From Schmidtea nova (taxonomy: Eukaryota), in NCBI GenBank assembly GCA_044892505.1, contig CM097884.1, positions 136,772,001 to 136,836,000 of the forward strand: 64,000 nucleotides of DNA, read 5' to 3'. The notes under the pieces were generated by a model, which searched no databases, was not told the origin of the DNA, and was given only the letters and a program-made list of their open reading frames with translations. The stretch's first letter is position 1; every line of letters starts with the position of its first letter. The translations under genes and the position numbers were made by a program. Of the stretch, positions 18,249-43,289 are shown in pieces.

Positions 18249-19229
18249 CTAGAAAAACATTTTTTAAATGATAATATAATAAATAAAATTAAATAATCAA
18301 ACTCGAAAATATTTTTATGAAAATATTTCACCATCGTACTAGCTCCCATACAAAATACAGTATTTGAAATATCACATAAAATGAGTCAAAAAGAAAAGGT
18401 AAACAAAATAAAAACAATTTAACATTTGCAAATATATAATATTAATTTTTATATCATAAATATAATTAGTTATATGTTTAATTGCTTATTATTTAGTGGG
18501 TCGGATTCTAATTAGAAAAAAAATGAATGCCATACCATCATAGGCCCGGCAGATTTGATATATGGTCCTCGGCACAGCTATAATATGTTAATTTTAACAA
18601 AATATATTTAATTTATATAATACCAGTAGAGTAGGGGGAGCGCCCAAGAACAGGAACAGACCCCCCCTCCCCCCAAAAAAAAAAATTTTTTACCCCCCCA
18701 AAAAAAAATTTTTGTTTAAATGAAGTGAATTTTTTAAATTTTTTATTTTGTTTAAATTAAGTGAATTTTTAATTTTTAATTTTGTTTAAATGAAGTGAAT
18801 TTTTTAATTTTAATTTTTTGTTTAAATGAAGTCAATTTAATTTATTATTTTGTTTAAATGAAGTCTTTATTTTATTTTTATTTATTTTTTATTTATTTCT
18901 ATTTATTTTTATTTATTTTTAATTATTTTTAATTTATTTTTATTTTTAATATATTATTTTTAATAATTTATTTTTAATAATTTATTTTTATTAATTTATT
19001 TTTATTAATTTATTTGTATTAATTTGTATTAATTTATTTTTAATAATTTATTTGTATTAATTTATTTGTATTAATTTATTTTTAATTTATTTTTATTAAT
19101 TTATTTTTTAATAATTTATTTGTATTAATTTATTTGTATTAATTTTTTTTAATTTTTATTAATTTATTTTTAATAATTTATTTGTATTAATTTATTTTAA
19201 TTAATTTATTTTAATTATTTATTTTTGTA

Positions 19230-19940
19230 AAGGATTTTTACTCTGGTAATTTTGTACATGATTTTCTACTCCGAGATTTTCTAGGGCAAAAATAGACTCT
19301 GGATTTTTTGTACAGGGAATTTTTATACATGAAATTTTGAATAGGATTTTCAACTCCCATATTTTTCTAGGGCAAAAATAGACTCTGGTAATTTTGAACT
19401 AAATTTTTTATGGTAAATAAAAACACGTGTAAATTTTTTAAACTATTAAAATACATTAAAATTATTTTGAATAGGATTTTCAACTCACATATTTTTCTCG
19501 GGCAAAAAGGGACTCTGGTAATTTTGAACTGAAATTTTAATGGTAAATAAAAAACATGTGTAAATTTTTTAAACAAGTAAATTATCATTAAAGTATTTTG
19601 TATAGGATTTTCAACTCCCAGATATTTTCTAGGGCAAAAAAGGGACTCTGGTAATTTTCAACTAAATTTTTTTATGGTAAATAAAAACACGTGTAAATTT
19701 TTAAACTAGTAAAATACATTGAAATTATTTTGAATAGGATTTTCAACTCCCATATTTTTCTAGAGCAAAAATAGACTCTGATAATTTTGAACTGTAATTT
19801 TAATGGTAAATAAAAAACACGTGTAAATTTTTTAAACTAGTAAAATACATTGAAATTATTTTGAATAGGATTTTCAATTCCCAGATTTTTCTTCAGGCAA
19901 AAATAGACTCTGGTAATTTTGAATATGATTTTTAGTCTGG
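19230..19940. repeat. ~130-bp tandem array (about 5 units)
   Basis: Recurrent ATAGGATTTTCAACTCCC...GACTCTGGTAATTTTGAAC...GGTAAATAAAAACACGTGT; mirrored at ~41880-42570. Confidence 0.85.
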
Positions 19941-38800: not shown

Positions 38801-41800
38801 ATAGATGAACAATGATTTCAATAGAGCTTTGAATTAAAAGTCATTTGCATTTTAAATATATTCAAAATTTTTAATAACTTTTAAAATTTTATTTTAAGTA
38901 CGTAGATATTAGTATACCTTTTTGAAAACTGATAATCAACTAAAGATTAATTAAATTATTCAAAGTAATAAATTTAATTTTATGACACGATATTTAGAAT
39001 CAGTTAGTTTTAAATATCTTATCTAGTTAATGCGAAGAGTTAATTGATACGTGGAACAAATTCCTTAGAGTGAAGAGTTAGTTGGTTGATGTATAGAACT
39101 AGTTGGTATCCGATTAGTTGATTTAACTAGTAGATTGTGGTTAGATTCAATTGATATTTAATAATTAACTAGTCTGTTGTTGATTTATGAATAGTTAGTT
39201 GGTTAATGAGAAGAGTTAGTTGGGAAGTAAGGAATTGGTTGATAATTATTGTGTTTAGTTAGTTAGTTGGTTAATGTAGTTGGTTGGTTGATGTATTGTT
39301 GGTTAGTAAGAGATTAGTTGTTGGTAAGTATGTATAGCTAGTTAGTTGGTTAATGTATAGAACTAGTTGGTTAGTAANNNNNNNNNNNNNNNNNNNNNNN
39401 NNNNNNNNNNNNNNNNNNNNNNNNNNNNNNNNNNNNNNNNNNNNNNNNNNNNNNNNNNNNNNNNNNNNNNNNNNNNNNNNNNNNNNNNNNNNNNNNNNNN
39501 NNNNNNNNNNNNNNNNNNNNNNNNNNNNNNNNNNNNNNNNNNNNNNNNNNNNNNNNNTAGTTACTTGGTTAGTTAGTTACTTGGTTAGTTACTTGGTTGA
39601 TGTATAGAACTAGTTGGTTAGTAATGAATTGGTTGCTGGTTAGTATGTATAGTTAGTTACTTGGTTGGTGATTTGTGAATAAAGTTAGTAAGTAAGGAAT
39701 TGTACTATTTGTTAACTAAGGGGATTGGTTTATTTGATATATAGGCAATAGGAAGTGATTGACACATGGAACAATTTCCTAGTTGGTTAATATATAGAGT
39801 CAGTTGGTAACTTGTAAGTAACTAATCGATTGTTGATTTATGGATAGAGTCAGTTGGCATTTGATCAGTTACTAGTCAGTGGTTGATTTGTGTGTGTAAT
39901 GAGATTATTAGTTATTTGATCGGTTTATTGCTGGTACTTAGNNNNNNNNNNNNNNNNNNNNNNNNNNNNNNNNNNNNNNNNNNNNNNNNNNNNNNNNNNN
40001 NNNNNNNNNNNNNNNNNNNNNNNNNNNNNNNNNNNNNNNNNNNNNNNNNNNNNNNNNNNNNNNNNNNNNNNNNNNNNNNNNNNNNNNNNNNNNAATTATT
40101 ACGTTTATTTTTAAAAATTTATGTCATTAATTGATATTTTTTAACTTAGTATACAAAATTGTAAAAACTCTTGTTTAATAACTATTTTTATTCTAAATAA
40201 ATTCAATATTTACATGTGTTTTATTTACTACATTTGATCATTTCCTTAAAAAACATCATATTGAAAAAACAATTAGATTTGTATTTATTAGTTAAAAATT
40301 TTACTTGTGAAAAATATTTACTTGCGAAAAAATGTTTACTTTGTATTTATTAATTAAAAAAAAAATTTACATTGATTTTATTGCTAAAAAATTCTACATT
40401 GACCTTATTGTTAATAAATTTTACTTTAAAAAATTTCAAAAATAATTAATTATTCTCACATTTTTCAAATATTACCTTAAAAAGTTCCTTTAAAAGCAAT
40501 TCTTTTTTAAATTATGACATTAAAACTCACGTCTTTCTTAATTTACTTTTTTATTCTTAATTTACTTATAATTCTATTTATCATTAAATTCATAATTATT
40601 TTTAAAATTCTATCTTTAATTTATTTACTTTGATATTTTTCATAAATCCAGTACAAATTATTTTTAAATTCTAAGTTTAATTTACTTATTATTTCCATGC
40701 TTTTATTTAATGTATCATTTTACTTGATAAATTCAATACAAAATAATGAGTGAATTATTTACTGAGTTTTGAAATTCGTATAGAATTTATTTACTTTTTT
40801 ATTTAATGTACCATTTTACTTGATAAATTAAATACAAAATAATGAGTGAATTATTTATTGAGTTTTGAAATTCGTATAGAATTTATTTACTTTTTTATTT
40901 AATGTACCATTTTACTTGATAAATTAAATACAAAATAATGAGTGAATTATTTATTGAGTTTTGAAATTCGTATAGAATTTATTTACTTTTTTATTTAATT
41001 ATCATAAATTTATTTAGATTTAATTATTTAGTTTAAAAATTTTTATTTTAAATATTTCCACGTTTTTATGTATTTTACCCTTTTTTACTGAGACTGTAAT
41101 TTTACGTATAAAATTTTGATTTTTTCATGATTTTAATTTTTTGACCATTATTGTTTGCCTTTCAATTCTCAGTAGATTGGTATAAAAATTATTGAATTCT
41201 GACAACTTTTTAATTTTTTGAAATTCCCTGAGTTGACCATTTTTACGTGTAAAAATTGAGTCGGAAAAGTCAAAATTTTCATGTTTTTACTTTTTGACCC
41301 TTTTTTGTTCCCCATTCAATTCTCAGTAGATTGGTATAAAAATTATTGAATTCTGAGCATTTTTAATTTTTGGAATTTCCCCGAGTTGACCCTTTTTACG
41401 TGTAAAAATTGTATCGGAAAAGTCAAAATTTTCATGTTTTTACTTTTTGACCCTTTTTTGTTCACCATTCAATTCTCAGTAGATTGGTATAAAAATTATT
41501 TGATTCTGAGCATTTTTGATTTTTGGAATTTCCCCGAGTTGACCATTTTTACGTGTAAAAATTGGATCGGATTAGCCAAATTTTTCATGTTTTTTAATTT
41601 TGACCATTATTGTTCACCATTCGATTCTCAGTAGATTGGTATAAAAATTATTTGATTCTGAGCATTTTTGATTTTTGGAATTTCCCCGAGTTGACCATTT
41701 TTACGTGTAAAAATTGGATCGGAAAAGTCAAAATTTCATGTTTTTACTTTTTGAACCTTTTTTGTTCCCCATTCAATTCTCAGTAGATTGGTATAAAAAT

Positions 41801-43289
41801 TATTGAATTCTGACCACTTTTTAATTTTTTGGTTTTCGCCGACCAAAATATTATTTTCAAAAATACCAGACTAAAAATCATATTCAAAATTACCAGAGTC
41901 TATTTTTGCCTGAAGAAAAATCTGGGAATTGAAAATCCTATTCAAAATAATTTCAATGTATTTTACTAGTTTAAAAAATTTACACGTGTTTTTTATTTAC
42001 CATTAAAATTACAGTTCAAAATTATCAGAGTCTATTTTTGCTCTAGAAAAATATGGGAGTTGAAAATCCTATTCAAAATAATTTCAATGTATTTTACTAG
42101 TTTAAAAATTTACACGTGTTTTTATTTACCATAAAAAAATTTAGTTGAAAATTACCAGAGTCCCTTTTTTGCCCTAGAAAATATCTGGGAGTTGAAAATC
42201 CTATACAAAATACTTTAATGATAATTTACTTGTTTAAAAAATTTACACGTGTTTTTTATTTACCATTAAAATTTCAGTTCAAAATTACCAGAGTCCCTTT
42301 TTGCCCGAGAAAAATATGGGAGTTGAAAATCCTATTCAAAATAATTTCAATGTATTTTAATAGTTTAAAAAATTTACACGTGTTTTTATTTACCATAAAA
42401 AATTTAGTTCAAAATTACCAGAGTCTATTTTTGCCCTAGAAAAATATGGGAGTTGAAAATCCTATTCAAAATTTCATGTATAAAAATTCCCTGTACAAAA
42501 AATCCAGAGTCTATTTTTGCCCTAGAAAATCTCGGAGTAGAAAATCATGTACAAAATTACCAGAGTAAAAATCCTTTACAAAAATAAATAATTAAAATAA
42601 ATTAATTAAAATAAATTAATACAAATAAATTATTAAAAATAAATAAATACAAATAAATTAATACAAATAAATTATTAAAAATAAATTAAAAATAAATTAA
42701 TAAAAATTAAATAATAAAAATTAATAAAAATAAATTAAAAATAAATTAATACAAATAAATTAATANNNNNNNNNNNNNNNNNNNNNNNNNNNNNNNNNNN
42801 NNNNNNNNNNNNNNNNNNNNNNNNNNNNNNNNNNNNNNNNNNNNNNNNNNNNNNNNNNNNNNNNNNNNNNNNNNNNNNNNNNNNNNNNNNNNNNNNNNNN
42901 AAATAAATTAATACAAATAAATTATTAAAAATAAATTAANNNNNNNNNNNNNNNNNNNNNNNNNNNNNNNNNNNNNNNNNNNNNNNNNNNNNNNNNNNNN
43001 NNNNNNNNNNNNNNNNNNNNNNNNNNNNNNNNNNNNNNNNNNNNNNNNNNNNNNNNNNNNNNNNNNNNNNNNNNNNNNNNNNNNNNNNNNNNAAAATAAT
43101 AAATTAAATTGACTTCATTTAAACAAAAAATTAAAATTAAAAAATTCACTTCATTTAAACAAAATAAAAAATTCACTTAATTTAAACAAAATAAAAAATT
43201 TAAAAAATTCACTTCATTTAAACAAAAATAATTTTTTTTGGGGGGAGGGGGGGTCTGTTTCTGTTCTTGGGCGCTCCCCCTACTCTACT
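35804..43289 (-). mobile_element. Complete 7,486-bp non-autonomous Maverick-type unit with ~0.6-0.7-kb TIRs
   Basis: Both ends carry AGTAGAGTAGGGGGAGCGCCC followed by AAATGAAGTGAATTT and AT-rich repeats; left flank TTTATA does not match right flank AATACC. Confidence 0.75.
36973..37513 (-). CDS. Second intact copy of the three-exon orphan gene (exons 37513-37498, 37450-37296, 37248-36973)
   Basis: Same 47-nt introns and frame; differs by F7T and a G-to-E change (KIGD/KIED) plus synonymous changes. Confidence 0.75.

What the first reader, a model, noticed from the sequence alone, without database searches (positions are those of the whole stretch)
18625..43289. 24.7-kb composite Maverick-type element: two inverted 7-kb units bracket ~10 kb of DNA under a single 6-bp TSD
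Seen: both outer ends read AGTAGAGTAGGGGGAGCGCCC inward and are flanked by a direct repeat AATACC. An inverted duplication of flank would give GGTATT instead. The arms are reverse complements over ~6.8 kb, and a third terminus sits inside at 35804. Known: AG...CT termini with 6-bp TSDs are the Maverick/Polinton signature, but their TIRs are normally under ~1 kb. Inference: two non-autonomous units acted like the IS ends of a bacterial composite transposon and moved the intervening 10.4 kb. An alternative is that a unit-containing segment recombined into a resident unit. Either way it is a route for moving large pieces of DNA.
Basis: partly seen in the sequence, partly recalled or inferred. Interest (0 to 1): 0.88.

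Follow-up and report, generated by a model that had tools for sequence, protein, structure and literature searches.

The report
Two inverted Maverick-type units, one duplication
Two non-coding copies of a Maverick-type mobile element sit head to head around 10.4 kb of ordinary repeat-rich DNA, and the whole 24.7-kb block is flanked by one 6-bp target duplication. This fits a block that went in as one piece, but a recombination event or a scaffolding error in this gappy assembly could give the same picture.

Summary
The 21-nt terminus occurs exactly three times (18625+, 35804+, 43289-), and AATACC flanks the two outer ends as a direct repeat (chance about 3e-4 to 1.5e-3).

The arms are non-coding units built of tandem-repeat arrays. 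Each end has four copies of a 22-bp subterminal motif. The right unit (35804-43289) is complete, with its own TIRs of about 230 to 700 bp. The left unit (18625-25397) is its reverse complement but lacks its inner terminus.

The centre (25398-35803) has the GC content of the flanks. It holds decayed transposon pieces, including the last ~250 codons of a protein-primed DNA polymerase B. Next to that remnant lies a repeat about 70% similar to one of the unit's own arrays.

The end motif, the 6-bp duplication and this polymerase link support a Maverick/Polinton affiliation. No autonomous partner and no further copies could be reached.

Composite ("macrotransposon"-like) insertion is the leading reading (about 0.4). 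It cannot be separated here from recombination of a unit-bearing segment into a resident unit, or from mis-scaffolding across nine gaps. The arms are a mosaic: identical unique sequence in the outer part, 2.8% divergence in the inner part.

The parts
18619..18624 (.). Left copy of the 6-bp target-site duplication, AATACC
18625..25397 (-). Left unit. It is non-coding, the reverse complement of the right unit, and lacks its inner terminus. It ends in the 14-bp array.
18625..18645 (+). Outer terminus of the left unit (AGTAG reiterated, then a G run)
18711..18838 (+). Four copies of the 22-bp subterminal motif at about 36-bp spacing
19227..22953 (.). Zone of near-identity between the arms (counterpart 42565-38546). 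It has 7 mismatches, all in tandem arrays, and none in about 1.9 kb of unique sequence. Whole-repeat indels of 152 and 192 bp are present.
23022..24788 (.). Zone of about 2.8% divergence between the arms (counterpart 38244-36499), with 50 mismatches
25398..35803 (.). Centre (cargo), 10,406 bp. GC is 0.275, like the flanks. It contains decayed transposon remnants and has no gap.
25398..25796 (+). 132-codon open frame with a weak GIY-YIG match. It begins at the junction with the left unit. From my own knowledge I read it as the 3' part of a 5'-truncated Penelope-like retroelement.
26739..27490 (+). Remnant of a protein-primed DNA polymerase B gene (last ~250 of ~1200 codons). The N-terminal three quarters are missing. 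The remnant has one frameshift and one in-frame stop.
27550..27831 (+). Sequence 70-72% similar to the unit's 152-bp tandem repeat, in the same orientation as in the right unit
31831..32750 (-). Probable mariner-type transposase remnant (weak evidence only)
35804..43289 (+). Right unit. It is complete and non-coding, with its own TIRs (terminus, four motifs, 14-bp array at each end).
35804..35824 (+). Inner ('third') terminus, preceded by TTTATA
35889..36016 (+). Four copies of the 22-bp subterminal motif
43106..43226 (-). Four copies of the 22-bp subterminal motif
43269..43289 (-). Outer terminus of the right unit
43290..43295 (.). Right copy of the 6-bp target-site duplication, AATACC

Best explanation
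This is a real 24.7-kb insertion. Its two ends are the outward-facing termini of two inverted, non-coding Maverick/Polinton-type units: one complete, and one that has lost its inner end. At some donor site the two units lay about 10 kb apart around ordinary transposon-rich DNA.

A Maverick integrase supplied in trans would have treated the two outer termini as one left end and one right end. It would then have joined the whole block into a staggered 6-bp cut at AATACC, as IS ends do in a bacterial composite transposon or foldback ends in the Drosophila Ising element. The reiterated AGTAG tip and the four subterminal 22-bp motifs per end are the likely sites for protein-primed replication and for end recognition.

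Shown here: the three identical termini, the motif sets, the single direct duplication, the orphan inner flank, the non-coding arms, and a centre that resembles host DNA.

Inferred: that the block travelled as one piece, that the enzymes were a Maverick pPolB and integrase acting in trans, and that the identity mosaic of the arms comes from gene conversion between them.
For: - The terminus occurs 3 times against 0 expected. The 22-bp motif occurs 12 times against 0.04 expected, four copies at each end and none elsewhere.
- AATACC flanks the outer ends as a direct repeat, with chance 3e-4 to 1.5e-3.
- The inner terminus has a different flank, TTTATA. The right unit is therefore not a simple insertion of its own.
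- One gap-free stretch (25271-36030) holds the left unit's inner array in the expected orientation, the whole centre and the right unit's inner terminus.
- The centre's GC (0.275) matches the flanks (0.28-0.30), not the arms (0.20-0.21). Its transposon remnants are decayed. It looks like carried host DNA, not later nesting.
- Maverick link: published end motifs are (AGT)2//(ACT)2 with 6-bp duplications, and the end reiteration is tied to protein-primed replication. A pPolB C-terminal remnant (best E 4e-50) lies directly upstream of a relative of the unit's 152-bp repeat.
- At 24,665 bp, the block falls within the published 13-25 kb range for Polintons and just above the 24,620-bp vertebrate maximum.
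- polB-less polintons carrying transposon cargo are reported to amplify.
Against: - This is one locus only. No second copy, donor copy or empty site could be examined (searches gave nothing).
- Nine N runs lie between the outer ends and the contig-level inner part.
- No integrase or capsid gene, and no autonomous element with these ends, is in the window.
- I know of no published report of composite mobilisation for Mavericks, and none turned up.
- The complete right unit has a competing inner terminus.
- The same sequence is predicted by recombination into a resident unit.
Confidence: 0.4

Rival explanations
1. Resident unit plus recombination. A single unit inserted at AATACC in the ordinary way. 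Later, a break in its inner 14-bp array was repaired from another locus that carried [centre + unit]. That repair copied about 17 kb into the resident unit, by gene conversion or template-directed repair. The right-hand junction lies in shared TIR sequence. The left-hand junction lies at the array or retroelement border.
For: - The left unit stops exactly where its terminus and motifs should begin, and abuts a truncated open frame.
- The right-hand TIR could belong to either unit.
- The arms are a mosaic of identical and 2.8% divergent zones, which shows that recombination or conversion has acted here.
- The orphan TTTATA flank is equally expected under this reading.
Against: - It needs a very long copied tract with homology secured on one side only, unless the donor locus already had the same composite layout.
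- It has no direct support in the window.
Confidence: 0.2
2. Scaffolding artefact. The AATACC site really holds one ordinary unit with a normal duplication. The scaffolder threaded a contig from another unit-bearing locus (25271-36030), together with further unit contigs, into it across gaps that lie in low-complexity arrays.
For: - There are 15 N runs in 64 kb, nine of them inside the block. All are at tandem repeats, and one island between gaps is only 39 bp long.
- Both joins that this reading needs fall in gaps beside the 14-bp arrays (24789-25270 and 42766-43092).
- Unique sequence in the outer zone is 100% identical between the arms.
Against: - The four critical junctions lie inside gap-free stretches.
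- The inverted pair around the centre is contig-level.
- The arms were assembled independently. They differ in repeat copy number inside gap-free contigs, one arm has sequence where the other has a gap, and the inner zone differs by 2.8%.
- Every gap's flanks are colinear with the other arm.
Confidence: 0.25
3. An ordinary member of an established long-TIR family. The layout 'unit - centre - inverted unit' arose earlier and now propagates as a family, so this insertion is a routine transposition of a long-TIR, cargo-bearing Maverick derivative. It would resemble Teratorn, with its long inverted repeats and internal TIRs.
For: - TIRs of about 2 kb that duplicate genes, and transposon cargo, are reported in insect polintons.
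- Teratorn has internal TIRs at the border of its long inverted repeats.
- The centre contains a pPolB remnant.
Against: - No second copy was seen.
- The centre has host-like GC and only a quarter of one Maverick gene.
- The arms differ by 2.8% in their inner zone.
Confidence: 0.1

Closest known systems
Maverick/Polinton elements and their polB-less, cargo-carrying derivatives
   Same: - The 5'-AG...CT-3' ends carry a short reiterated tip.
- The target duplication is 6 bp.
- The unit's TIRs are hundreds of bp long.
- The total size is in the 13-25 kb range.
- Transposon cargo is present.
- A pPolB remnant is linked to the unit's repeat family.
   Different: - The units encode nothing.
- No integrase, capsid, ATPase or protease gene was detected.
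- The inverted arms are 6.8 kb long, against a published maximum of about 1.5-2 kb.
- Each arm is a whole element rather than a TIR.
- A third, internal terminus is present.
Bacterial composite transposons (two IS copies around cargo)
   Same: - Two inverted copies of a mobile unit bracket unrelated DNA.
- One target duplication flanks the whole.
- The inner end lacks a matching duplication (for the concept).
   Different: - The host is a eukaryote.
- The ends are of a self-synthesising, virus-like transposon class, not an IS.
- The units carry no transposase, so all functions must come in trans.
Ising's transposing element between foldback elements in Drosophila, and maize Ac macrotransposons (the latter from my own knowledge)
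   Same: - Outer ends of two nearby elements act together on the DNA between them.
- The arms are built of tandem repeats, as in foldback elements.
   Different: - The element class and end chemistry differ.
- Foldback elements make 9-bp duplications (my own knowledge), not 6 bp.
Teratorn (piggyBac-herpesvirus fusion) with long inverted repeats and internal TIRs
   Same: Long inverted repeats have an extra, usable terminus at their inner border.
   Different: - Only one internal terminus is present here.
- The transposase class differs.
- There is no viral gene set.

Membership tests
Maverick/Polinton | 6-bp (5-8 bp) target-site duplication | tested here: met
   AATACC flanks both outer ends. 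Only one insertion could be tested.
Maverick/Polinton | 5'-AG...CT-3' ends with a short reiterated end motif | tested here: met
   The tip reads AGTAG twice and then a G run, at all three ends. Published motifs are (AGT)2//(ACT)2 and (AG)3//(CT)3.
Maverick/Polinton | Terminal inverted repeats of about 0.05-2 kb | tested here: met
   The right unit's two ends align over about 230 bp, and further through the arrays to about 700 bp. The 6.8-kb arms of the block lie outside the published range.
Maverick/Polinton | Encodes a protein-primed PolB and a retrovirus-like integrase | tested here: not met
   The units have no open frame with any family match. Only the last quarter of a pPolB gene lies in the centre. 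No integrase was seen. The block can at most be a non-autonomous derivative.
Maverick/Polinton | Capsid, packaging ATPase and protease genes | tested here: inconclusive
   The open stretches that I scanned gave no Pfam match. Not every stretch was scanned, and decayed genes could escape detection.
Maverick/Polinton (non-autonomous member) | Shares its termini with an autonomous element of the same genome | not testable with these tools
   The host genome is not in the collections. Indirect link only: the repeat next to the pPolB remnant is 70-72% similar to the unit's 152-bp repeat.
Composite transposon / macrotransposon | Two end-competent copies, in inverted orientation, bracket unrelated DNA | tested here: met
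Composite transposon / macrotransposon | One target duplication around the whole, with inner ends lacking a matching duplication | tested here: met
   The outer flanks are both AATACC. The inner flank of the right unit is TTTATA.
Composite transposon / macrotransposon | The same block is found at other sites with other duplications, or a donor copy exists | not testable with these tools
   There is no other copy in the window and no access to the rest of the genome.
Foldback elements | Long TIRs made of tandem repeats, and a 9-bp duplication (the latter from my own knowledge) | tested here: not met
   The arms are made of tandem arrays, but the duplication is 6 bp and the ends are of Maverick type.
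Ginger / LTR-type integrase elements | TGTNR ends and 4-5 bp duplication | tested here: not met
   The ends read AGTAG and the duplication is 6 bp.

The most novel reading that the evidence does not exclude
The ends of a self-synthesising, virus-like transposon can work in pairs across two separate non-coding units. In that way they could carry more than 10 kb of arbitrary host DNA as a composite. This would be a eukaryotic, Maverick-based counterpart of the bacterial composite transposon, and a possible way for host DNA to enter a virus-like vehicle.
Probability: 0.3. Interest if true: 0.8.

Novelty: new variant of a known kind. Interest (0 to 1): 0.55.

Why it matters
Mavericks are known to carry cargo and to cross species boundaries. 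If two stripped-down units can jointly move whatever lies between them, any genomic segment up to the size limit could be picked up without a prior capture event inside one element. That would widen the known routes for gene duplication and for horizontal transfer in animals. If the block instead reflects recombination or mis-scaffolding, it is an ordinary non-autonomous Maverick insertion in a repeat-rich draft genome.

Tried and rejected
Searches that gave nothing:
- Exact look-ups of two window proteins.
- A homologue search with the intact hAT transposase to place the host. The best hit was only 58% identical, so the host genome is not in the collection.
- A homologue search with the 91-codon open frame shared by both arms.
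- One scan of metagenome contigs with the 21-nt terminus. It found nothing, so nothing was fetched.
- Rfam on the whole window.
- Pfam on open stretches of the arms and the centre.
- A full-text search for the terminus string, which gave chance primer matches only.
- Kapitonov and Jurka 2006, which is not held in the library.

Readings rejected:
- Inverted duplication that includes flank. It would put GGTATT at one side.
- Inversion between two independent insertions. It would put GGTATT beside the inner terminus, but TTTATA is there.
- The right unit as a simple insertion. Its flanks differ at 4 of 6 positions.
- The left unit's inner terminus hidden in a gap. The gaps lie inside the 14-bp array, and no motif copy exists elsewhere.
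- The centre as transposons that nested after insertion. It has host-like GC and decayed content.
- One contig pasted twice. The arms differ in repeat copy number, in gap positions and by 2.8% in the inner zone.
- Ginger, LTR or foldback affiliation (see the membership test).

The 13-nt likeness between the flanks upstream of the outer-left and inner termini (12 of 13 positions, at offset positions) is at most a hint of target preference. I estimate its chance at about 0.01.
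Full report
**1. Observation**

It occurs nowhere else, even with three mismatches, against 0 expected.

AATACC lies immediately outside both outer ends as a direct repeat, at 18619-18624 and 43290-43295. The chance of that is 3.2e-4 from base composition and 1.5e-3 empirically for 6-mers at this spacing.

Aligning the three ends shows more than 200 bp of shared sequence that begins exactly at the first A of AGTAG. 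The three upstream flanks are unrelated, so the boundary is sharp and the duplication is 6 bp. The inner terminus is preceded by TTTATA.

The block is 24,665 bp, of which 1,291 are N. The centre is 10,406 bp.

**2. Anatomy of the units**

Neither arm has an open frame with any family or homologue match.

Both arms are chains of tandem arrays with periods of 36, 14, 131, 152, 96, 71, 128 and 91/167 bp, separated by short unique stretches.

Each of the three ends carries:
- the tip, AGTAG twice and then a G run;
- a block of C, A and T runs;
- four copies of a 22-bp motif at about 36-bp spacing (12 copies in the window against 0.04 expected, none elsewhere);
- a 14-bp AT-rich array.

The right unit (35804-43289) therefore has its own TIRs of about 230 bp, extending to about 700 bp through the arrays.

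The left unit (18625-25397) is the reverse complement of 43289-36180. It ends inside its inner 14-bp array, so its inner motifs and terminus are missing.

At 25398 an open frame with a weak GIY-YIG match begins (E 0.004, below Pfam's cut-off). From my own knowledge I read it as the 3' part of a 5'-truncated Penelope-like retroelement.

**3. Mosaic identity of the arms**

Global alignment gives two zones.
- Outer zone, 19227-22953: 7 mismatches, all inside tandem arrays, and none in about 1.9 kb of unique sequence. There are also whole-repeat indels of 152 and 192 bp.
- Inner zone, 23022-24788: 50 mismatches, about 2.8%. A 130-bp repeat indel lies at the border between the zones and a 156-bp indel lies inside the inner zone.

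The contrast is significant (Fisher p about 1e-17).

Gap-free contigs of the two arms differ in repeat copy number, and one arm has sequence where the other has a gap. The arms were therefore assembled independently.

I take the mosaic as a sign of gene conversion between two copies that had already diverged by about 3%. This is an inference.

**4. Gaps**

The window has 15 N runs, nine of them inside the block. Two of these (42766-42900, 42940-43092) were not in the program's list.

- All lie at or beside tandem repeats.
- For each gap, the sequence on both sides is colinear with the other arm.
- Where the other arm is gap-free, its counterpart is 125 bp against 152 N (39942-40093) and about 13 bp against 175 N (24789-24963).
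- One gap coincides in both arms and cannot be cross-checked.
- No frame is affected. I filled nothing.

The four decisive junctions lie inside gap-free stretches. One such stretch (25271-36030) holds the left unit's inner array in the expected orientation, the whole centre and the inner terminus. The link from that stretch to the two outer ends crosses gaps.

**5. The centre**

GC is 0.275, like the flanks (0.28 and 0.30) and unlike the arms (0.20 and 0.21).

The centre contains:
- the GIY-YIG frame (25398-25796);
- a probable mariner-type remnant, resting on two weak hits to the same fold (HTH_48 at E 0.019 and the SETMAR DNA-binding domain at E 0.01);
- a tandem duplication (32850-34026) and a (TA)n run;
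- a remnant of a protein-primed DNA polymerase B gene.

For the polymerase remnant, a 110-residue piece found 71 proteins. The long ones carry Pfam DNA_pol_B_2 and match at their extreme C-termini.

Searching the window with those proteins finds one locus only, 26739-27490 on the + strand. It corresponds to the last ~250 residues of a protein of about 1200, with best E 4e-50. The gene lacks its N-terminal three quarters, and the remnant has one frameshift and one in-frame stop.

Directly downstream, 27550-27831 is 70-72% similar to the unit's 152-bp repeat, in the orientation it has in the right unit (E about 1e-30). This is the only sequence-level link between the units and a polymerase-bearing Maverick.

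**6. What it is**

The end motif, the 6-bp duplication and the TIR length of the single unit match what is published for Mavericks/Polintons:
- end motifs (AGT)2//(ACT)2 or (AG)3//(CT)3, with perfect 6-bp duplications;
- TIRs of 46-1,447 bp and sizes of 12.7-24.6 kb in vertebrates;
- end reiteration tied to the jumping-back step of protein-primed replication;
- sizes of 13-25 kb, TIRs of 100-1,500 bp and duplications of 5-8 bp in general;
- TIRs of about 2 kb, transposon cargo and amplifying polB-less copies in butterflies.

The defining genes are absent from the units, so they can only be non-autonomous derivatives. Whether an autonomous element with the same ends exists could not be tested.

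**7. How it most likely arose**

Because the outer ends share one duplication, they entered this site in one integration event. Three histories give the present sequence.

- **(i) Composite insertion.** Two units about 10 kb apart at a donor site, one already lacking its inner end, were handled through their outer ends and inserted together. The orphan TTTATA flank, the host-like decayed centre and a size within the Maverick range fit this reading.
- **(ii) A resident unit received about 17 kb (centre plus second unit) by recombination or template-directed repair.** The position of the left junction and the evidence for conversion between the arms fit this reading. It needs either a very long one-sided tract or a donor locus that was already composite.
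- **(iii) Mis-scaffolding of a single-unit insertion.** The gap density makes this possible. The independent assembly of the arms, the contig-level inner pair and the colinearity at every gap argue against it, but do not exclude it.

I put these at about 0.4, 0.2 and 0.25. A further 0.1 goes to an already established long-TIR family, which is a variant of (i).

**8. Comparison and novelty**

The block works like a bacterial composite transposon, like the foldback-flanked Ising element, and in part like Teratorn with its internal TIRs.

I found no report of composite mobilisation by Maverick ends. If reading (i) is right, this is a new variant of a known kind. If not, it is an ordinary non-autonomous Maverick insertion.

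**9. Limits and slips**

The host was not identified. It is an AT-rich animal-type genome rich in Tc1, hAT, FLYWCH and retroelement sequences, and nothing suggests human.

Slips:
- In my working I compared a translation with polymerase motifs that I remembered. Nothing rests on that; the assignment rests.
- One search printed the coordinates of open stretches across the centre. Those coordinates bound the interruptions of the polymerase remnant by implication.
- In my reasoning I located one interruption. I do not repeat these places here, and nothing was deleted.

I did not look up the contigs that encode the polymerase relatives; see the referred steps.

Noticed in passing
window 18605-18617 and 35791-35803: The DNA just upstream of the outer-left terminus and of the inner terminus shares a 13-nt AT-rich string (12 of 13 positions), at offsets that differ by 7 bp. 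It could be chance (my estimate is about 0.01) or a target preference.
   Followed up: partly
window 23975-24247 (+) and 36976-37248 (-): A 91-codon open stretch of normal amino-acid complexity is kept in both arms, with one residue different. It has no Pfam match and no homologue.
   Followed up: yes
window 8739-9758 (-): An intact 339-codon Tc1/IS630-type transposase frame (DDE_3 at E 1e-23, with HTH domains).
   Followed up: partly
window 55815-58433 (-): An intact 872-codon hAT-type transposase frame (DUF4371 plus the hAT dimerisation domain). The nearest relatives are only 58% identical and are named 'zinc finger MYM-type protein 1-like' in sawflies and other animals.
   Followed up: partly
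window 50088-51548 (+): A FLYWCH zinc-finger frame (E 4e-12) is followed by a second open frame without a Pfam match. Together they are probably one transposon-derived gene.
   Followed up: no
window 17861-18194 (-): An open frame starts with ATG about 430 bp from the left end of the block and runs into an N run. It has no Pfam match. If it is a host exon, the block sits just upstream of a gene.
   Followed up: no
window 32850-34026 and 34090-34162: A tandem duplication with a period of about 560-620 bp (88-90% identity), followed by a perfect (TA)36 run, lies inside the centre.
   Followed up: no
window 42766-42900, 42901-42939, 42940-43092: Two N runs that the scan's program did not list lie here, with an island of only 39 read bases between them. 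That is unusually short for a scaffolded contig.
   Followed up: partly
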